From positions 41,912,001 to 41,976,000 of the forward strand of contig NC_134479.1 of the NCBI RefSeq assembly GCF_964194025.1: a stretch of 64,000 nucleotides of DNA, written 5' to 3'. Shown here in pieces: positions 23,035-49,179 of the stretch. Within the stretch, counting starts at the first letter, position 1; every line of letters begins with the position of its first letter. Origin of the DNA: Convolutriloba macropyga. Its lineage: Eukaryota. Below the pieces are notes generated by a model. That model saw only the letters and a program-made list of their open reading frames with translations. It ran no database searches and was not told where the DNA came from. A program made the position numbers and the translations under genes.

Positions 23035-24798
23035 TCAAATAGATTGAAATTGAGTTTCCCACGCGTCATATTTACTCTTCATACCTTTAGCTGATGGTTT
23101 TGTTTTGTCAAGAGCTTGCACAACATCCCCAGTTGTGATTGTCTTCAAAGTGAGCGATTGTGGCAAATCTTTGGCAGATTGGCAATTTTCAAGAACATCA
23201 AAAATATCTCTGACTTTGTCCATAGCAGCCTCTTTGCACACTAACCTTATGTCCGACCCTGAATAACCCTCCGCTTTTTCAGCTAAAGCTTTGTAATCTA
23301 ACTTTGTATGCAATTTCAAGCAGTTATGGCTCGAGTTTTCGTTTAACAAAGAGGGGAGAAATTTTTGAAACATCGAAACACGAGCTTCACAGATCGGCAG
23401 ATCGACTAAGATTCGTTTTTCAAGACGTCGTAACATTGCATGGTCCAGCATCCAGGGTAAATTTGAAGCCGCAAGAAGAAAAACCAAATCATCAGATCTG
23501 GCCAACCCGTCCATTTGCACCAAAAGTTCTGTTTTCATCCGACGACTACCTTCGTGTTCGGTTCCGAAACCCTCTCCTCGTTGACTAATTAAACTCTCCA
23601 ATTCGTCGACAAAAATAGTGCTCGGCGCGTGAAATCTTGCAAGGTCGAACAGGACTCGAACCAACTTCTCCGAATCACCGCGCCATTTTGAAACTATACT
23701 TGAAGCTGAGATGTTGAAAAAGGTAGTATTGCACTCGCTAGCAACCGCTTTGGCAAGAAGAGTTTTCCCAGTTCCGGGCGGGCCGTAAAGAAGCAACCCT
23801 TTCCATGGTGACAGAATTCCCTGGAAAAGCTCAGGGTATTTGATGGGGTAAACTACGGCCTCTTTGACTAACTTTTTAGCGTTGTCCAGACCAATAATAT
23901 CGTCAAATTTGACGCAGGTACTTTCTAAATAGATGTCTTTGCTGATAGATACGGCAAGTTCGCGCATTTCCGAATTGTACCCCGCTAGAGCGCCAACAGG
24001 TTTCAAAAATCTGTCGTCATAATCCGAAGTTGTTTTCTTTGTCATAACATCATTGAAAAAATTCTTATTTGCCGAGTTTGGGTTCGGGTTTTCATGTTGC
24101 CCGTCGCCAAAAATTGCATCTTTTAACAGAGCCCGGTAGTCTATAATTTGTCCAGCTTTAGCCCGGCTTGTTTGGGGTTCATTTTTTGCTGGCACGCCTT
24201 GCACGCTTAAACCCGATAAGTGGTTCGAATTTGAGTGTCCGTTTGTATCTGAAACGCCGTTTTGTTTCAAGTCGTCTTTCGGACTTCGTTTAATGGTCCC
24301 GGCCGACATCTTTTTATCGGAAGCGTTGGGTTTACTTTGAGGTGTAACAGTGTTTGAAACCGCTCTATTTGTAACTGTTGGGTTTTCGGGGGGCTGTTTT
24401 TCACTGGTGGAGGGGCGTTCAATTTTGGGTAAAGGGTTTTGGCTATTCGCAAATGATCTCTTCGCGTTTGTTCGTTTATGCGCGCTTTTTTCATCAACAT
24501 GGTTCGTTCCATTTTTCCGAATAATTCTCGGATGTCTCTGAAATTTGACGTAATAATACGACTCGTATTCTTGAAGAATTGTTTCCAAATCAACGTTGTC
24601 CGCTACTTCAAAAGATTCAAGGGGTAAATTTGTTTCAGAGGCTAACGAGTTTGCAGTTGTTGTAAAACCGGAGTTCTTCAGGTAATCATGCATTAAGATA
24701 ATGACATTTTTGCGCCTTTGGTCGGCTTTCTGTTCTTCGGCCTCCCGAGCTTGGTTCGCTGACCGTAATGACATATAATTGAGCTCAGCAACCGCCAT
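23035..24798 (-). CDS. KATNAL2: Katanin p60 ATPase-containing subunit A-like 2 (LisH + AAA), single coding exon, 587 aa
   Basis: N-terminus ELNYMSLR..QAREAEE..RRKNVIILMHDYL..DNVDLETILQEYESYYYVKFQRHP is characteristic of KATNAL2. It also has ILSPWKGLLLYGPPGTGKT (Walker A), SKWRGDSEK, IFVDE (Walker B) and MLRRLEKR. Confidence 0.96.
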   Translation of the reverse strand: MAVAELNYMSLRSANQAREAEEQKADQRRKNVIILMHDYLKNSGFTTTANSLASETNLPLESFEVADNVDLETILQEYESYYYVKFQRHPRIIRKNGTNHVDEKSAHKRTNAKRSFANSQNPLPKIERPSTSEKQPPENPTVTNRAVSNTVTPQSKPNASDKKMSAGTIKRSPKDDLKQNGVSDTNGHSNSNHLSGLSVQGVPAKNEPQTSRAKAGQIIDYRALLKDAIFGDGQHENPNPNSANKNFFNDVMTKKTTSDYDDRFLKPVGALAGYNSEMRELAVSISKDIYLESTCVKFDDIIGLDNAKKLVKEAVVYPIKYPELFQGILSPWKGLLLYGPPGTGKTLLAKAVASECNTTFFNISASSIVSKWRGDSEKLVRVLFDLARFHAPSTIFVDELESLISQRGEGFGTEHEGSRRMKTELLVQMDGLARSDDLVFLLAASNLPWMLDHAMLRRLEKRILVDLPICEARVSMFQKFLPSLLNENSSHNCLKLHTKLDYKALAEKAEGYSGSDIRLVCKEAAMDKVRDIFDVLENCQSAKDLPQSLTLKTITTGDVVQALDKTKPSAKGMKSKYDAWETQFQSI

Positions 24799-42201: not shown

Positions 42202-44044
42202 TAGGTTCTCTATAAAGAAAATATTGCGCAATTTTTCTGAGACGCCAACAAATAACAAAAACCATGACTCACGTAGTAGTAAACTCAGAGGACAAAATTT
42301 TGAAAACTTTGGGTGTTGTATGTTATTGGCAAAGCGTACTTTACAAAGTTCCTATATTATTTTGTTTATCATTGTGGTCAATTATAATTTAAACGAAGTA
42401 GCGAAACATTTTTAATGTGGAGCTGATTGATCATTATTAACACTGTTTTTTAATCGTCATCGAGAACTAATTGAATTCTGAGGCGGATCTGAGTAGCTGA
42501 ATAGATTAGATAGAGCGATAAGGACCGTCTCCAAACCTTTTTAGTCAACTCTCAATACAACTAAAACAATGCAGACAGTACGCCACTGCGTAGCCGATAA
42601 TTAGAGACTATATTTTGTTCACCACTATTCTAAAGTTCAGATAGACTTTATTATGGTTAGTTGAAGGCACTTATAAATTTCGGGTCTGAATACTGTAAAA
42701 ATGATTGTTTTGGAGTGGGATCATATGTAAGTTGTAGTTCGGATGCCAATTCACATGACAGTTTATTGGAAAAGTTTTAGAGGAAGATTAACACCAAGTA
42801 TTCGAAAGGTCAGTCCAAAACATTGTGGAGAACTGCTCTGACTCTACCCAAGATGAGGTTCCCGGCCAAATCCAGCTCTGGTTATACCCACTTAGGTCGC
42901 GAATGTGGGGTAAAACTTGAACCTTCTACACAGTCTGTCAAGGCTACCTTTTTTCTGGAAAGTCAGATAACAGCCCAATCCAGAACCTCCACGATCTCAT
43001 CAACGCACTATACCTAGTGTCTGCTAAGTCTAATCAGAGCATGGTCCAGAGTATGGATAATATTGCGTTATGATCTGTACAGTCCGATCAGAAACCCTTC
43101 TAGAATCCGGAAAGTCTTATCAGAACCAAGAGAACCAAGAACACGGCCAGTACCAGAAAAAAAATTACCCCTCCCCTTGAACTGTTCATTGAAGAGCTTC
43201 CTAATTTCTTTTGATGAACATCAAAGACCACGCAAAAGACAGAGTAATTACTGCTCACAATTTTCTGTTAGAGAAGTTGAGATATACATCGCAGTTGAAG
43301 CGAATCAAATTCTTCTCTCCCTGAACACAAAGCAGCAAACATGCCGTGTTTGCTTGCATGAATTATCAAAAAATGCTCAATAAAACACTATAACTGATAA
43401 TAAAGGTGAAAAGATGCGAAAAAAGTATAAATTTAAAGCAGCTTTTGGCCCTAAGTCGATTTTATAGTACTGATCGATATGTAGCGGGTTATTTCATCCA
43501 TAAGTAATGCAATCTTTGTCAGCGCAAAGGAGATTGATAAGAAGTTTTTTAGAAAATGTGTTCTGGACATTAACAATAAAACATGCCCTATAAATTCTAC
43601 TGTAGAAGCTTTCAAATATATTGACACGTGCGTTGAAATAAAGTCGCCGAGTTGATGAGAGCTAAGCTCGAAATTGAATTCCTTTAAAATTTGGAACAAC
43701 CTTATTGAAGTAAATTACCTCAAGAGTTCAAGACCGAGCTTCAAAACCCGGTGAGATTGTTCTTGATCACCCCCCCCCCCTCCAACGTCGTACCGCCGCT
43801 AGCCCTTTAAAAAAAGCAGTCGAGTACTGCAACAGAATTAGCCACAACGGGAAGGACACTTCAGAGAAATTTTTTGTCCTATAAATTTTTGTCCTAAAAA
43901 TTCCTCGGCAAGTCATCAAAAAAGCAGTGGTCGACAACAACACGATCAAGTCTAGCTATCGCAAAAAAGAACCTTCGATTCGGGAAAGCACTTCTTTTTT
44001 TTACGATTTGCAATCCCCCGTATGATATAAATACAGTTTCGAAT

Positions 44045-47000
44045 ATGGGAAAAATGAATTACAATCTAAGAAAAACTGTTGTGAACGATAGTGTTCGTCT
44101 GCAAATCCAGTCTCAAGATAATGCTAGCTCACGAGACATCATTGTTGACTCTGACCCCATCAGTGATGCAAATACTGGTTTGACGAAAAACTTTCAAGAC
44201 TTGAGTGTAAAAGAGCAACTTTTAGAGTACTTTTCATCCCCGACACTGTCAACAAACTCTATAAGGTGCAAGTGTTAGAAAACTCGGGGCATGAAACCAA
44301 AATTAGATATAGTGGTTGGGGCTCAGAGCACGACACGTGGTTTAATGCGAAATCAGTTTGGGCCTATTCGAAGCACAAACATAACTTGAAGAATCGCAAA
44401 AAAATAACAAAAGAAATTTCAGATAAAATTGACCTACTCCTCGCGTTGTGTGAGCAGTACCAGCTTGATGATAATTTCTTTGAAAACGTTGAATAAACAA
44501 TACTGAACGAGAACAAAAAACTGCCCTCTTTACAGACAATAGTTAGTTCACATTTTCCAACATGTCGTTTCGTTCCGGTCAAATTTAGAGTTAAGTGGTC
44601 ACAACTGCTAACCAGCATCCTGGATGATTGTGCCACGACACCAGATGACGAACTAAATTGGCAGAAATTGTTTTCTGTTTCGAAGTGTATACTGCGTGCG
44701 AGCAACCGAGGAGGTAAAAAGCATAAACGAAATCAGGATCAGCGGCTCTCCGATCGCATCGATCGATGGAATGCGGGTGAATATGCAAACCATTGGACAG
44801 AAGCCTTGGCAATGAAACAAGCGAGGAAAAAATCCACAAACGGAATAGAAGAATTAGCCAGCAGAGCTAAAAGTCTATGTTTGCAAGGTCAATTTGGTCG
44901 CGCCGCAAAAATACTGTCATCTGAGGGACTTGCGCCTAATAACAGAGCTACTCTGAAAGCACTAGAAGAGCTACATCCCAAAGAAGTGCCTCCAACTTTG
45001 ATCCAACCAGACAATGTTGCTTCAAGTGCGTATCAATTTAGTGATAACATAGTTTTTGAACAATTGAAAACTTTCAGCAAGTACACTGCAGCTGGTCCTT
45101 CCAAGATGTATCCAGAGCATCTATTGCACGCAGTAGAGTGTACTGCTCCCGACCACTCTGAATCCGCCCTTAAAGCAATAACAAGGTTTGTAAATACAGC
45201 AAGCAGAGGTAATTTTCCTTCATTTGTTTCAAAAGCCCTCTGCAGCGCATCGCTCACCGCTCTATCCAAAAAGAAAGGAGGAGTACGCCCAATAGCTGTC
45301 AGTGAAATCCTGAGGCGCCTGATTGCTAAATGTTTGGTGAAAGAAGCAAAATCAGAAGCAATTGAGTTGTTCGATTCCATTCAGCTAGGGGTTGGAGTCA
45401 GCGGAGGTGCGGAAGCAATTATCCACTCTGCAAAAATCACCTACGAAAAGATCCTCAACGCTGAATCTAATGAAGGAGTGCTTCAGATTGATTTCCGAAA
45501 TGCCTTTAATTCGGTTAAGCGTTCACACTTATTGCAAGCAGCATGCGATTTCATACCAGGTATCGCAGCCTTCACATATTTTTGCTACTCTCAGCATATG
45601 CCACTACTGTACAATAACGCCAGTCTTCAAAGTGAATCGGGTGTTCAGCAAGGAGATCCCTTGGGTCCACTTCTCTTTTCGTTGGCGTTATGGCCTGTTA
45701 TAGAAAAAATAAGAGACGCGGTTCCAAATCTTACCCAGCACACTTGGTAATTGGACGATGGTTTTGTTGCAGGTTCAGAAGATCAAATCCGAACTACGCT
45801 CGATATCTTAGCTAATGAAGGTCCAAAAAGGGGTCTGTATTTGAGGAAAGACAAGTGCGAACTCTGGTCAATCGTAGATCTACCTTCAGTTGATCGAGAA
45901 GTTACAAGAAATATGGGCAATGGTTTTGAAGTACTGGGTGCCGCAGTCGGATCACCAGTATTTGTTTCTTCTTGCCTACAGAAACGTGTTCAGAAGGTTG
46001 TGTCGCTCTTGGAAAATTTGAGTTATCTGGATGATCCTCAATGTGCTCTCGGCATACTTCGTTATTGCCTAGGGACACCAAAGTTAGTCTACTCTCTACG
46101 CACTAACACGCCGACAAGACATCTGATCGATGTTTTAAAAGTTTTTGATTCTAGCCAACGGGATGCGTTAGATCAAATAATAGGTGCTGTCACCTCTGAC
46201 AATGCGTGGATGCAGTCAACCTTGCCAATAAACATTTCAGGCCTCGAGTGCGACAATCGCAAGAGCAGTACAGAGCCGCATATGTGGGCTCAGTGATAGC
46301 ATCTGATGACTTGGTTCAGAAAATAACAAACCAGCGCGCGTCGGACAGTAGGGTTTTTAAGGAACTCTATGAAAGCCTTGAACCTTTCAACTTGAATTCC
46401 TACACACAGAAGAAAATTCAAGAAGCTGTAGATACTGAAAAGTTTTCTGAGCTGCTGAGAAATCAGTCGTCAGACAGAGAGAAAGCAAGACTGCAATCAC
46501 TCTGTTTGCCTCATTCCGGCGCATGGCTTGCGGCACCTCCAGTTCCTGCCTTAGCTCTCCATCTGAGTCCCAGTGAATTTCAAATTAGTGTCAAATACAG
46601 ACTAGGTATTGCAGTTTATGAAGATGAAAGAAAATGCCCTCACTGCAGGTCTGGGACCCTTGACCTTTTTGGTGACCACGCCGTCATCTGTACCGGAAGA
46701 GGGGATGCAATTCCTCGGCATGACAGGATTCGTGACCGTTTTGCATCAGCTTGCTCATCAGCTAACTTGTCCCGAGTCATCGAAAAACGGAACCTTATTG
46801 CAGGAAACGGTTCTGGCCCTGGCGACATATTTCTGCCCTCATGGAAATCAGGTCATCCAGCTGCTCTAGACGTCACCGTAACTTCTCCACTGCAATCAAA
46901 CATTATAAATCATACGGCAGAGAAGTCTGGTTGCGCGATTGAAGCAGCCGAAGAGCGAAAGTATGCACAACACGGAAAAAATTGCCCTGAGCAAGGATTT

Positions 47001-47201
47001 TTGTTTGTTCCTCTCGCTGTTGAGTCATTGGGTGGTCAGTCAGTTACTCTCAAGAAAGCGTTAAAGCGCATAGCTCTGTTAGCTGACAGCAGGAATTATC
47101 AGTCGCAGGGAAATGCTATCGCTTTTGATAGATTGGTTCAGTCGGTTTCCGTTGTGATTGTACAAGGATCAGCTACAATGTTGCTTGCACGAGTCCCGTA
47201 A
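44045..47201 (+). mobile_element. CRE-clade non-LTR retrotransposon, single ORF (chromo-barrel-like N-terminus, RT, CCHC knuckle, RLE), inactivated by 4 lesions
   Basis: RT motifs: LTALSKKKGGVRPIAV, QLGVGVSGGAEAIIH, IDFRNAFNSV, GVQQGDPLGPLLF, W*LDDG (YLDD Tyr mutated to TAA at 45748). C-terminal motifs: HSGAWL, CPHC..DHAVIC, RHD, PGDIF..W..ALDVTV..AEERKY, PLAVESLGG. Lesions: frameshift near 44271, stop at 44494, stop at 45748, frameshift near 46246. 3' UTR extends to about 47358. Confidence 0.9.
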
Positions 47202-48060
47202 CCCCAATTTTTGCAATATTTTTGGACAAATTCTATTTCGGCAAACTTTGTGATCTCCAAGAAGAAAGGAGTCTTTTGAGAAGCGTCACCCAATGAGAGG
47301 GGACCTTCGTTTTTGTAAATATTGTCTCACCCAATGACCGGGGAGAACATAAATAATTTTCTAAAGTTCATAGAAGATTGAAACGAGAAGAATTCTGAAA
47401 CTTAAGGAGAACAGGACTGATGTTATAGAGTGCGATTGAGAAGAGTGAAGAATTTTTCAACAAAAAACACACTTATTTGAACCTTTAATGAGCAAAAACT
47501 TTTGATTCCGAATCAAAGTTTGATAACAAAGATTTGTATTCATTCATAATAGATTGGTTTTCAAATATACGTTGGCAAAATGGCAAGTCACCTGATGACA
47601 AGACGGAACGGCATGTAATTCAAAATGGACCGAACTTTAAATGAATGACTCTAACAAATATTCAAAACATTTTAAATAAAAAATGAGCCATTTGATTTAA
47701 TTGATTCCTCTGAAGTCAATTGCTGGCGGCATCAGCGCTGATTCCGTTTGAGTATTTTCTACAAAGCCCATCAGATAGTCCAATTAACGAAAAACAGAAT
47801 ATACGTATATTTGAACCCCAAATTTTCAATTTTTAGCTTTGCATTAGAAGTGCTGTAGTGCTAAAGAAAGAGTTTCAAAAGAATTGTAATGCTAACAAAA
47901 AAGACCAGTTCTGATTTTTGACATGTACATAATTTATCGTCAAAAAACATTATGTTATCGCCACGAAAATCTCGACAATTTTTTTTGCAAGCCCTAAGCA
48001 TTTGATTCACCTCAACTAACTATTTACGATTCGTTTTTATGCTATTTGGACCGTAGTTGC

Positions 48061-48387: not shown

Positions 48388-48427
<40 letters not shown>
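48388..48427. repeat. (TA)n microsatellite
   Basis: Direct reading. Confidence 0.95.
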
Positions 48428-48430
<3 letters not shown>

Positions 48431-49179
48431 GTATATGTATTTATATATATTTTTATTTGTGTATAAGCTCTCAGCTGACTGAACTAATTTGTCGGGTCAT
48501 GTTAAAAAATATTTTTTTAAGTTCTTTCTCATAGGCTTAAAACAAAATGTTTTGTGGGTTTTATCATGGCAATCAACTACGGATAACAGGTGCTTCGTTT
48601 TCCTGGCGGCAACTGAGAACTCATGCGATAGAATATAGTCTTTTTTTGAAAAAAAATATGAAAGAAAAAAATACATTGGTAGAAGAAGGCCAAACAAAAT
48701 ATCTCTCGCAAATTCAATTGGTTGCTTTTGTTTGGACAGTTAGGGACCTGTATTGGCGTCAGTTGGTTGAATAAAAAAGAAAGCTTACGCTCATGTCAAA
48801 ACAGTAATTTATCTTTTTTCAATGATTTACCTAATGTTGCGGCTGTCTTTTTTTCCACAGAAATTCTGAAGTTTTGCTCATTTTTTATTGCTTGATAGAG
48901 AAAATGCTCACTAATCATCATTTGCTAATTTTTTTGTTTGAATTTATTGCCTCTACACTAGCGTAAATTTAATGATGCAGACTATGGTACCATAAATAAG
49001 TATAGCATAATTTTTTTCTATTTAAGCATTGTTTTTACACCATTAAGCATTATTTTTACACCAAATGTTTGAATTTCGCTAAAGCTGGACAAAAAGTGTT
49101 GTTTATTATTTCATCGGAGATTTTATTCCCTATTCTTCCTCTACACAAGAAAAAGCGGTTTTAATCTCTCACTGTTTGC

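What the first reader, a model, noticed from the sequence alone, without database searches (positions are those of the whole stretch)
44201..44370. CRE-clade RLE retrotransposon carrying an N-terminal chromo-barrel (Tudor-knot) domain
Seen: restoring one base near 44271 gives LSVKEQLLEYF..SIRCKVLENSGHETKIRYSGWGSEHDTWFNAKSVWAY. From 44272 this is in the same frame as the CRE-typical LPSL..TCRFVP..W..RGG block and the RT, separated only by one TAA. Known: it parallels the MRG15/Eaf3/MOF chromo barrel (FQEGERVLCF..EAKCV..FIHYSGWNKNWDEWVPESRVLKY), whose Y/W residues form a methyl-lysine cage; MOF/Esa1-type barrels can instead bind nucleic acid. CRE elements usually have N-terminal zinc fingers, and none is visible here. 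Chromatin-reader targeting is best known from chromoviral integrases. Inference: a non-LTR lineage that swapped DNA-sequence recognition for a captured histone-mark or RNA reader. I cannot confirm it is unreported.
Basis: partly seen in the sequence, partly recalled or inferred. Interest (0 to 1): 0.85.

Follow-up and report, generated by a model that had tools for sequence, protein, structure and literature searches.

The report
LINE retrotransposon with a histone-reader-like barrel
The window holds a dead copy of a very abundant jumping gene of an acoel worm whose protein starts with a small barrel domain of the type that reads methylated histones, which suggests, but does not show, that it picks insertion sites by chromatin state and not by DNA sequence.

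Summary
Window 43625-47558 (+) is a full-length, inactivated copy of a non-LTR retrotransposon. The genome is Convolutriloba macropyga, an acoel.

- **The lesion in the domain:** it is a 13-nt deletion at 44223, not one base near 44271. The ORF carries three more lesions.
- **Intact copies:** at least four encode one 1056-aa ORF: leader, barrel (aa 58-113), conserved N-terminal block, RT, CCHC knuckle, restriction-like endonuclease.
- **Abundance:** at least 1336 loci carry the barrel, in five subfamilies.
- **Selection:** between subfamilies the barrel's dN (0.20-0.25) matches RT and endonuclease, while its flanks run at 0.46-1.0.
- **Fold:** sequence, profile and fold searches all place it in the Royal superfamily (Tudor / MBT / chromo-barrel). 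It passes no single Pfam model.
- **Cage:** the aromatic-cage positions are conserved.
- **Clade:** the closest reviewed protein is SLACS (CRE clade), but clade membership is untested.
- **Relatives:** related endonuclease-bearing LINEs carry chromodomain, PHD, SAP or zinc-finger modules in the same N-terminal slot.
- **Targets:** insertions are dispersed, with no shared target sequence.

Methyl-lysine reading that tethers integration is my best inference (about 0.55). It is not shown. First-stage readers noted this domain in eight other windows of this genome.

The parts
43610..43620 (+). 5' copy of a putative 11-bp target-site duplication (TTTCAAATATA)
   Evidence: The same 11-mer lies at 47559-47569. 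It is longer than the best match in any of 200 shuffles, whose maximum was 10.
43625..47558 (+). Full-length but inactivated copy of the retrotransposon (subfamily A). It is 96.3% identical to intact copy L034.
   Evidence: The 5' end motif CACGTGCGTTGAAATAAAG is shared with other full-length copies. The 3' UTR anchor ends at 47546.
43625..44044 (+). 5' UTR (about 420 nt)
   Evidence: Similarity between copies begins here, and the conserved ATG lies at 44045.
44045..47201 (+). Broken single ORF (1056 aa in intact copies). Lesions: 13-nt deletion at 44223, TAA at 44494, TAA at 45748, 1-nt deletion at 46246.
   Evidence: Pairwise alignment to L034 and an in-register stop scan; ORF list.
44216..44370 (+). 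Royal-family beta-barrel (aa 58-113 of the intact ORF). Its first strand is destroyed here by the 13-nt deletion.
   Evidence: sequence; homology; fold; selection; conserved cage positions.
44527..44811 (+). Conserved N-terminal block upstream of the RT fingers (LPSL..TCRFVP..W..RASNRGG, aa 164-260)
   Evidence: Conserved in all relatives, including the Diplonema 'SLACS RT' protein. It falls inside the stretch aligned to SLACS residues 367-1174.
45268..45870 (+). Reverse transcriptase core (Pfam RVT_1, aa 413-613). The YLDD motif at aa 573 is hit by the TAA at 45748.
   Evidence: Pfam RVT_1 at E 8.4e-17 on the intact copy and 5.8e-10 on the window piece.
46635..46691 (+). CCHC gag-knuckle-like motif (CPHCRS...HAVIC)
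   Evidence: Motif position. The cysteine and histidine columns are invariant or nearly so across 39 relatives.
46716..46960 (+). Restriction-like endonuclease (RHDRIRD ... PGD ... LDVTV ... K)
   Evidence: Motifs. The model has pLDDT above 90 here and aligns to the C-terminal ends of SLACS and R2.
47202..47558 (+). 3' UTR. This copy has no A-run. Most other copies end in a variable 8-20 nt followed by A7-14.
47559..47569 (+). 3' copy of the putative target-site duplication

Best explanation
**Shown**
- The window carries a dead copy of a young, very abundant non-LTR retrotransposon family of the acoel Convolutriloba macropyga.
- Its single 1056-aa protein has this order: short variable leader, Royal-family beta-barrel, variable linker, conserved N-terminal block, RT, CCHC knuckle, PD-(D/E)xK restriction-like endonuclease.
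- The barrel is kept in frame in all five subfamilies.
- It evolves as slowly as the catalytic domains.

**Inferred**
- The barrel sits where R2- and CRE-type elements carry sequence-specific zinc-finger or Myb DNA-binding modules.
- It keeps the aromatic positions that form the methyl-lysine cage in MBT, chromo-barrel and Tudor domains.
- So it most likely docks the protein-RNA complex on nucleosomes that carry a methylated lysine.
- The endonuclease would then nick nearby DNA with little sequence preference and prime reverse transcription there. This would give dispersed insertions chosen by chromatin state.
- Which mark is read cannot be said.
For: **Architecture and abundance**
- Four natural copies have an intact 1056-aa ORF.
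- At least 1336 candidate barrel loci exist. All 150 scored have E below 2e-36, and many lie in open frames of 1042-1126 aa.
- The RT query found 7327 candidates.
- There are five subfamilies.

**Selection**
- Between subfamilies, barrel dN is 0.20-0.25. RT is 0.14-0.32 and the endonuclease 0.13-0.29.
- The leader runs at 0.5-0.9 and the linker at 0.46-1.0.
- dS is saturated.

**Royal-family identity**
- phmmer hits to proteins that pass the Pfam Tudor-knot, MBT or MSL3_chromo-like cut-offs: E 1e-9 to 8e-4 over 1.84e9 sequences.
- Profile-profile match to those domains: probability 97.1%, E 5.7e-11.
- PDB sequence hits: L3MBTL3/L3MBTL1 at E 4e-4, then SFMBT, SAWADEE and EAF3.
- AlphaFold core pLDDT is 75-84 with an SH3-like strand order.
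- All 50 top Foldseek PDB hits are small SH3-like beta-barrels, 49 of them Royal-family domains and one a designed SH3-like barrel.
- VIA-align Z: 7.3 for SETDB1 Tudor, 6.9 for L3MBTL1 MBT, 5.7 for MRG15.

**Cage positions across 17-20 aligned family members**
- Y/F77 in 17 of 18.
- Y/F93 in 17 of 20.
- W96 in 18 of 20.
- Y/F/H100 in 16 of 20.
- D71 in 15 of 17.

**Slot logic**
- Related endonuclease-bearing LINEs carry other modules N-terminal to the same conserved block: Chromo (P0082, P0084), PHD (P0097, P0103, P0117), SAP (P0101) or a C2HC-like zinc finger (P0063, P0066, P0199).
- These sit on separate, well-supported branches.

**Targets**
- Flanks of 25 copies share no sequence and are not AT-enriched: 64.8% against 62.2% AT, p = 0.15.

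**Published background**
- Chromodomains direct LTR-retrotransposon integration to H3K9me chromatin (Gao et al. 2008, as cited in 10.1101/2021.11.30.470311).
Against: - No binding or insertion-site-versus-chromatin data exist.
- The domain passes no Pfam gathering threshold on its own. The best is MBT at 17.8 bits against a cut-off of 22.
- Fold scores are middling in absolute terms: Foldseek E 0.02-0.15 and Z below 8.
- The conserved aromatic residues are also part of the fold's core in non-binding Royal domains.
- Position 100 is not aromatic in 4 of 20 members. Subfamily B has Met at W103.
- Some chromo-barrels (MOF, Esa1) bind nucleic acid (general knowledge).
- I could not inspect model coordinates, so the cage geometry is unverified.
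Confidence: 0.55

Rival explanations
1. The barrel binds nucleic acid, either the element's own RNA or target DNA, as reported for MOF/Esa1-type knotted Tudor or chromo-barrels and some PWWP domains. It would replace the zinc-finger/Myb module as a sequence-independent DNA or RNA clamp, not as a histone reader.
For: - Fold hits include the MOF chromo-barrel and a PWWP bound to ssDNA.
- The slot is a DNA-binding slot in R2-type elements (PMC5678591).
- A basic linker (KHKHNLKNRKK) follows the barrel.
- One relative carries a SAP DNA-binding motif in the same slot.
Against: - All four aromatic cage positions and the acidic D71 are conserved.
- The closest sequence relatives are MBT and Tudor-knot-type methyl-lysine readers.
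- Sister lineages chose chromodomain and PHD, which are histone readers.
Confidence: 0.22
2. The barrel recognises a methylated or other motif on a non-histone host protein, for example a chromatin, repair or small-RNA-pathway factor. It would serve recruitment of a host cofactor or evasion of silencing, not choice of insertion site.
For: - Royal domains such as PHF20 Tudor and extended Tudors read non-histone methyl marks (general knowledge). PHF20 and PHF20L1 Tudor domains are among the best fold hits.
- The family's very large copy number would fit an advantage against silencing.
Against: - There is no extended-Tudor (SN-like) scaffold. It is a single 56-aa barrel.
- Nothing in the data points to a particular partner.
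Confidence: 0.12
3. The barrel is a passenger or a chance resemblance with no function in transposition.
For: Direct Pfam scores are below cut-off.
Against: - It is kept in frame in five subfamilies whose synonymous sites are saturated, with dN equal to that of RT and endonuclease and 2-5 times lower than its own flanks.
- It has significant hits to bona fide Royal domains.
Confidence: 0.03

Closest known systems
SLACS / CRE1 / CZAR (CRE clade of restriction-like-endonuclease LINEs, trypanosomatids)
   Same: - Single ORF with a conserved N-terminal block, RT, CCHC knuckle and C-terminal PD-(D/E)xK endonuclease.
- SLACS (P15594) is the best Swiss-Prot structural match to the RT-endonuclease model. 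E is 7.9e-32, with 18% identity, query residues 11-890 aligned to SLACS residues 367-1174.
   Different: - No N-terminal zinc fingers. A Royal barrel takes their place.
- Insertions are dispersed, not confined to spliced-leader genes.
- Most copies have a short A-run.
- The host is a bilaterian animal.
- Membership by RT phylogeny is untested, and R4/Dong or HERO affiliation is not excluded.
R2 elements (R2Bm, avian R2)
   Same: The overall enzyme layout and, presumably, target-primed reverse transcription. A small separate N-terminal globular module does the targeting (PMC5678591).
   Different: R2 uses zinc-finger and Myb motifs to read one 28S rDNA site. Here the N-terminal module is a Royal barrel and there is no common target. 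The sequence relationship is distant (PDB E 2.7e-7, RT core only).
Chromoviruses (Ty3/gypsy LTR retrotransposons with an integrase chromodomain, e.g. MAGGY)
   Same: A retroelement that carries a methyl-lysine reader of the Royal/chromo superfamily. There it tethers integration to marked chromatin (cited in 10.1101/2021.11.30.470311).
   Different: - A different element class (integrase, not TPRT).
- A canonical chromodomain at the C-terminus of integrase, not a barrel at the N-terminus of an RT-endonuclease protein.
MBT repeats (L3MBTL1/3), SETDB1 and PHF20 Tudor domains, MRG15/Eaf3/MSL3/MOF chromo-barrels
   Same: - SH3-like barrel.
- The motif hYxGWxxx[YFH]D[ED]W.
- An aromatic residue on strand 2.
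- Best sequence and fold matches.
   Different: - Scores fall below every Pfam family cut-off.
- It has its own conserved C-terminal motif, S-[IV]-W-A-Y.
- It is a single copy without MBT arms or an MRG domain.
- It is attached to a retrotransposon enzyme.
Reader-domain/TE fusions catalogued by Grau-Bove et al. (10.1101/2021.11.30.470311)
   Same: The general principle that TEs capture Chromo and PHD readers. The supplementary table lists cnidarian LINE gene models: PHD with L2, and PHD or TUDOR with 'Dong-R4'.
   Different: - Those are predicted gene models in a table, not characterised element architectures.
- I found no Tudor-knot or MBT-like barrel joined to a LINE there. The stored file is cut.

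Membership tests
Royal superfamily (Tudor / MBT / chromo-barrel / PWWP SH3-like barrels) | Small SH3-like beta-barrel fold | tested here: met
   - The AlphaFold core has pLDDT 75-84, with strands at 23-27, 33-42, 45-50 and 59-61.
- The top 50 Foldseek PDB hits are all SH3-like barrels, 49 of them Royal-family, with probability about 1 and E 0.02-0.15.
- VIA-align Z is 7.3, 6.9 and 6.2 for SETDB1 Tudor, L3MBTL1 MBT and PHF20L1 Tudor.
- Absolute scores are middling because the domain is about 55 aa.
Royal superfamily (Tudor / MBT / chromo-barrel / PWWP SH3-like barrels) | Detectable sequence homology to accepted members | tested here: met
   - phmmer hits at E 1e-9 to 8e-4 to proteins that pass the Pfam MBT, Tudor-knot or MSL3_chromo-like cut-offs.
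- hhalign of A1 against A4: 97.1%, E 5.7e-11. The A4 domains hit Tudor-knot, MSL3_chromo-like or MBT at E <= 0.001 (6 of 10 each; best Tudor-knot 3.3e-9).
- PDB phmmer: L3MBTL3 at E 4e-4.
Royal superfamily (Tudor / MBT / chromo-barrel / PWWP SH3-like barrels) | Aromatic cage residues at the methyl-lysine pocket | tested here: inconclusive
   - Positions 77, 93, 96 and 100 are aromatic (or His) in 80-95% of family members, and D71 is present in 15 of 17.
- Their equivalence to the MRG15 and L3MBTL1 cage residues comes from the HMMER alignments plus my recall of the cage residues.
- The 3-D geometry could not be inspected.
Royal superfamily (Tudor / MBT / chromo-barrel / PWWP SH3-like barrels) | Binding of methylated lysine or arginine | not testable with these tools
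   Needs peptide arrays, ITC or NMR.
Chromo-barrel / Pfam Tudor-knot (PF11717), MSL3_chromo-like (PF22732) | Score at or above the Pfam gathering threshold | tested here: not met
   - Tudor-knot was not reported at E up to 1.
- MSL3_chromo-like scored 13.5 bits against 28.
- MBT scored 17.8 bits against 22.
Chromo-barrel / Pfam Tudor-knot (PF11717), MSL3_chromo-like (PF22732) | Closer to chromo-barrels than to other Royal subfamilies | tested here: inconclusive
   MBT and SETDB1/PHF20 Tudor rank slightly above MRG15, MSL3 and MOF in both sequence and fold searches, but the differences are within noise.
Restriction-like-endonuclease (early-branching) non-LTR retrotransposons | Single ORF with RT followed by a CCHC knuckle and a PD-(D/E)xK endonuclease, and no AP endonuclease | tested here: met
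   - ORF translation and motifs.
- RVT_1 at E 8.4e-17.
- The full-length model (pLDDT 92.6) aligns end to end with SLACS and R2 proteins.
CRE clade | RT groups with CRE1, CRE2, SLACS and CZAR in a phylogeny that includes R2, R4/Dong, NeSL, HERO and Utopia | tested here: inconclusive
   - SLACS is the top Swiss-Prot hit by ten orders of magnitude over R2.
- A 30%-identical Diplonema relative is auto-named 'SLACS reverse transcriptase'.
- No trypanosomatid, R4, HERO or NeSL sequences could be fetched.
- Deep branches of my tree are unresolved.
CRE clade | N-terminal C2H2 zinc fingers | tested here: not met
   - There is no Cys/His pattern in aa 1-165 and no zinc-finger Pfam hit.
- That founding CRE elements have such fingers is my general knowledge, and PMC5678591 states it for the early-branching group.
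CRE clade | Site-specific insertion (spliced-leader genes in the founding members) | tested here: not met
   Copies lie on all large scaffolds, with unrelated flanks.

The most novel reading that the evidence does not exclude
The N-terminal slot of this group of restriction-like-endonuclease LINEs is an exchangeable targeting cassette. Different lineages would have replaced sequence-specific zinc fingers with different histone-mark readers: a Royal barrel in the acoel family, canonical chromodomains and PHD fingers in relatives. That would turn site-specific elements into chromatin-state-specific ones. In C. macropyga this change would have allowed a genome-wide burst of thousands of copies. 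The barrel would be the first methyl-lysine reader shown to guide target-primed reverse transcription.
Probability: 0.35. Interest if true: 0.8.

Novelty: new variant of a known kind. Interest (0 to 1): 0.62.

Why it matters
How LINEs choose where to insert is understood for a few site-specific elements (R2) and, loosely, for L1. Chromatin-mark reading has been shown experimentally only for LTR elements with integrase chromodomains.

This family is a natural, highly successful LINE whose DNA-binding module has been replaced by a selected Royal-family barrel. Relatives carry chromodomain or PHD modules in the same slot. Together they give a direct test of whether target-primed reverse transcription can be steered by histone marks.

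The finding also bears on efforts to re-target R2-type enzymes for gene insertion, where the N-terminal module is the part being engineered. It further explains part of the repeat load of an acoel genome.

Tried and rejected
- **Direct Pfam assignment.** Scans of the window pieces, the intact ORF and 20 family members gave only sub-threshold MBT, MSL3_chromo-like, SAWADEE and PWWP hits. No single Pfam family can be claimed.
- **Profile of the family against PDB sequences.** It was weaker than the single sequence: L3MBTL3 at E 0.028 and MRG15 at 0.76.
- **Word-indexed search with the N-terminus.** It found only one near-identical protein.
- **Family HMM against 86 relatives from other sources.** No hit.
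- **Barrel of the sister lineage P0040.** It aligns in register but at only 9% probability. Common origin of the two barrels is open.
- **Fetching trypanosomatid CRE/SLACS references through the Diplonema protein.** This failed, so I could not make a named-clade phylogeny.
- **Target-site duplications.** They are convincing for the window copy (11 bp) and plausible for L035 (10 bp) and L003 (9 bp). For most copies they are not above shuffled controls.
- **Flank composition.** No AT bias.
- **RNA evidence.** No run on record as RNA holds the element. I did not lay reads, because contigs of runs of unknown kind cannot separate RNA from repeat DNA.
- **ESM Atlas.** Only a lead: score 0.76 for a cluster with Tudor-knot and MBT.
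- **Literature.** Seven completed full-text searches (an eighth was rejected) found no description of a Tudor, MBT or chromo-barrel domain in a non-LTR element. The nearest are gene-model tables in 10.1101/2021.11.30.470311. Repbase and Dfam could not be queried.
- **Consensus or repair.** All protein work used natural intact copies.
Full report
**1. What is in the window**

The finding lies inside a 3.9-kb repeat at window 43625-47558 (+). ORF listing shows four open pieces in two frames:
- 44045-44278
- 44266-44496
- 44668-45750
- 45751-46296 overlapping 46206-47201

Pfam finds RVT_1 in the third piece. Only a weak MBT hit (E 0.05) falls on the second.

A DNA search of the window's own genome with 44045-44700 returned 40 scored copies at 88-96% identity. 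In these the segment is 669 nt, not 656 nt. Alignment shows that the window copy has a 13-nt deletion plus substitutions at 44223. It is not a one-base loss near 44271.

Against the intact copy L034 the window copy is 96.3% identical. It carries four ORF lesions:
- the 13-nt deletion at 44223
- CAA>TAA at 44494
- TAA at 45748, in the first codon of the catalytic YLDD
- a 1-nt deletion at 46246

The element is flanked by an 11-bp direct repeat, TTTCAAATATA, at 43610-43620 and 47559-47569.

**2. Intact copies and the family**

Four natural copies (L032-L035) have one uninterrupted 1056-aa ORF. It starts at the conserved ATG and ends in ...LLARVP.

Its order is:
- variable leader, aa 1-57, containing a conserved GLTQ motif
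- barrel, aa 58-113
- basic or variable linker
- conserved block, aa 164-260 (LPSL..TCRFVP..W..RASNRGG)
- RT, with YLDD at aa 573
- CCHC knuckle, at aa 869-887
- endonuclease motifs RHDRIRD, RPGD and LDVTV, from aa 896 to about 975

There is no zinc-finger pattern N-terminal to the RT.

An HMM of the N-terminal region finds at least 1336 candidate loci in this genome. All 150 scored have E below 2e-36, and many lie in open frames of 1042-1126 aa. An RT query finds 7327 candidates.

I recovered intact ORFs of five subfamilies, A to E, which are 54-71% identical overall. Copies within a subfamily differ by dS 0.02-0.07, so the family was active recently.

The genome is Convolutriloba macropyga. 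An NCBI protein of that species (P0038) is encoded at 100% identity on scaffold C13. The length of C13, 49,130,780 bases, equals that of the NCBI record.

**3. Is the N-terminal domain a Royal-family barrel?**

Direct Pfam scans stay below cut-off: MBT 17.8 bits against 22, MSL3_chromo-like 13.5 against 28, and SAWADEE 13.2 against 28. Four independent lines nevertheless agree.

- (a) phmmer of aa 51-175 against 1.84 billion representatives gave 35 hits. About 25 are fragments of the same element family at 27-88% identity. Most of the larger or multi-stretch remainder (P0013, P0024, P0025, P0026, P0028, P0034, P0036, and P0031 by its near-identical motif) are unrelated proteins at E 1e-9 to 8e-4; the seven scanned pass the Pfam cut-offs for MBT, Tudor-knot or MSL3_chromo-like. 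Two others (P0015, P0035) look spurious.
- (b) A profile of 20 family members against a profile of ten of those non-element domains gives 97.1% probability and E 5.7e-11 over 47 columns. Those ten hit Tudor-knot, MSL3_chromo-like or MBT at E <= 0.001 (6 of 10 each; best Tudor-knot 3.3e-9).
- (c) Against PDB sequences, the best hits are L3MBTL3 and L3MBTL1 at E 4e-4, then SFMBT, SAWADEE and EAF3.
- (d) The AlphaFold model has a confident core (pLDDT 75-84) with an SH3-like strand order.
  - All top 50 Foldseek PDB hits are SH3-like barrels, 49 of them Royal domains: PHF20L1 and PHF20 Tudor, MBT, MRG2/MRG15/MSL3/MOF chromo-barrels, and PWWP.
  - VIA-align gives Z 7.3 for SETDB1 Tudor, 6.9 for L3MBTL1, 6.2 for PHF20L1, 5.7 for MRG15 and 5.5 for MSL3.

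The subfamily (chromo-barrel, MBT core or Tudor) is not resolved. 'Royal-family barrel of the hYxGWxxx[YFH]D[ED]W type' is what the data support.

**4. Is it functional?**

Between subfamilies synonymous sites are saturated. Non-synonymous divergence by region is:

| Region | dN |
|---|---|
| Barrel (A vs E, A vs C, C vs E) | 0.20-0.25 |
| RT | 0.14-0.33 |
| Endonuclease | 0.13-0.29 |
| Leader | 0.5-0.9 |
| Linker | 0.46-1.0 |

So the barrel is as constrained as the enzymes.

The conserved positions are:
- L76 in 18 of 18
- Y/F77 in 17 of 18
- Y/F93 in 17 of 20
- W96 in 18 of 20
- Y/F/H100 in 16 of 20
- D101 in 17 of 20
- W103 in 17 of 20
- D71 in 15 of 17
- a family-specific S108-x-W110-x-Y112

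In the HMMER alignments to L3MBTL repeats, positions 93, 96 and 100 fall on the F/W/Y positions that I recall as the MBT methyl-lysine cage. Y77 matches the strand-2 tyrosine of MRG15. This mapping is partly from memory and I could not check it on coordinates.

**5. Relatives and the N-terminal slot**

A search with aa 165-1056 found 87 relatives at 24-98% identity, mostly from unnamed assemblies. Named ones come from the sponge Ephydatia, Diplonema and a tardigrade, among others.

Their N-termini differ:
- a canonical chromodomain in P0082 and P0084 (E about 1e-10), which also have the C-terminal CCHC and endonuclease motifs
- PHD fingers at or above cut-off in P0097, P0103 and P0117, and below it in P0057, P0094 and P0095
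- SAP in P0101
- C2HC/Sgf11-like zinc fingers in P0063, P0066 and P0199
- Cys-rich motifs in P0044 and P0047
- a different barrel in P0040 (MSL3_chromo-like, E 0.0035)

In an RT-to-endonuclease tree the five acoel subfamilies form one clade (100/100), sister to P0040 and P0041. The chromodomain, PHD/SAP and zinc-finger lineages are separate supported clades. Deep branches are unresolved. The slot upstream of the conserved block therefore behaves as an exchangeable module, and several lineages fill it with histone readers.

**6. Clade**

A high-confidence model of aa 165-1056 (pLDDT 92.6) was searched against Swiss-Prot models. The best match is the SLACS 132-kDa protein of Trypanosoma brucei, at E 7.9e-32 and 18% identity over nearly the full length. 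R2 proteins follow at about 2e-22, then L1, Tx1 and R1 at about 1e-15.

This agrees with 'CRE-like'. However, Swiss-Prot holds no R4/Dong, HERO or NeSL protein, and I could not fetch such references. A published table classes cnidarian PHD-RT gene models as 'Dong-R4'. Clade membership stays open.

**7. Ends and targets**

Full-length copies start with (A/G)CACGTGCGTTGAAATAAAG, and some have partial duplications of that end. They finish with ...GTATTAATTCA, then 8-20 variable nucleotides and an A7-14 run. Flanks share no sequence and are not AT-enriched. Copies lie on all large scaffolds. This fits TPRT without sequence-specific targeting.

**8. Mechanism**

Shown:
- the domain architecture
- the barrel's Royal-family identity
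- purifying selection on the barrel
- modularity of the N-terminal slot
- dispersed insertions

Inferred: the barrel docks the ribonucleoprotein on methyl-lysine-marked nucleosomes and so biases where the endonuclease nicks (0.55). The rivals are nucleic-acid binding (0.22), reading a non-histone partner (0.12), and no function (0.03, contradicted).

**9. Novelty**

Capture of Chromo and PHD readers by TEs is published, including LINE gene models in cnidarians (10.1101/2021.11.30.470311). So is chromodomain-directed integration of LTR elements.

In the open-access literature I could search, I found no report of a Tudor, MBT or chromo-barrel-type domain in a non-LTR element. I also found no report of reader modules in the N-terminal slot of restriction-like-endonuclease LINEs. 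Repbase and Dfam were not searchable.

I rate it a new variant of a known kind. First-stage readers of this scan noted the same domain in eight other windows of this genome. That reflects the copy number and is not independent support.

Noticed in passing
G000:C10:59260285-59270042 (own genome, not in the window): Three barrel-bearing copies on the minus strand lie about 4.7 kb apart. Each has an identical 114-aa open frame and the same truncated HMM range. This looks like a head-to-tail tandem array of the element.
   Followed up: no
L003 and L005, 5' junctions (about locus 1050-1090); 3' junctions in L048-L067: Some copies carry a partial duplication of the element's first 8-10 nt at the 5' junction (e.g. 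AAACGTGC..AAACGTGCG). Most copies have 8-20 variable nucleotides between the conserved 3' UTR end and a short A-run. This suggests template jumps or non-templated additions during TPRT.
   Followed up: partly
intact ORF aa 44-56 (window about 44174-44212); P0040 aa about 220-232: A short motif, (S/T)GLTQxxxxL(S/T)(V/I), is conserved in all five subfamilies just before the barrel. In the sister lineage P0040 it lies after that protein's barrel. Its role is unknown.
   Followed up: no
L036, L037, L046, L047 (subfamily B): Subfamily B has Met in place of the otherwise conserved W103 (DEM for DEW), yet it keeps intact ORFs of 1042-1047 aa.
   Followed up: no
G000:C13:14272444-14274537 (L070): The RefSeq gene model LOC142351636 ('uncharacterized protein', 698 aa) is a copy of subfamily E of this retrotransposon. 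It covers the RT and endonuclease part only, so the genome annotation counts at least some copies as host genes.
   Followed up: partly
window 23035-24798 (-): An uninterrupted 587-aa ORF has an AAA ATPase domain (E 5e-38), an AAA lid and a weak N-terminal LisH-like match. It is probably an intronless host or retrocopied AAA ATPase gene.
   Followed up: partly
L069 (ENA ERZ27280958 contig k119_227682), protein P0082: A 1271-aa restriction-like-endonuclease LINE protein from an unnamed assembly. It has two zinc-finger-like motifs followed by a canonical HP1-type chromodomain (Pfam Chromo, E 1.4e-10) upstream of the RT.
   Followed up: partly
window about 48390-48450: A (TA)n/(TATA)-type microsatellite lies about 850 bp downstream of the element. 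It is visible as the YIYIYI runs in the ORF list.
   Followed up: no
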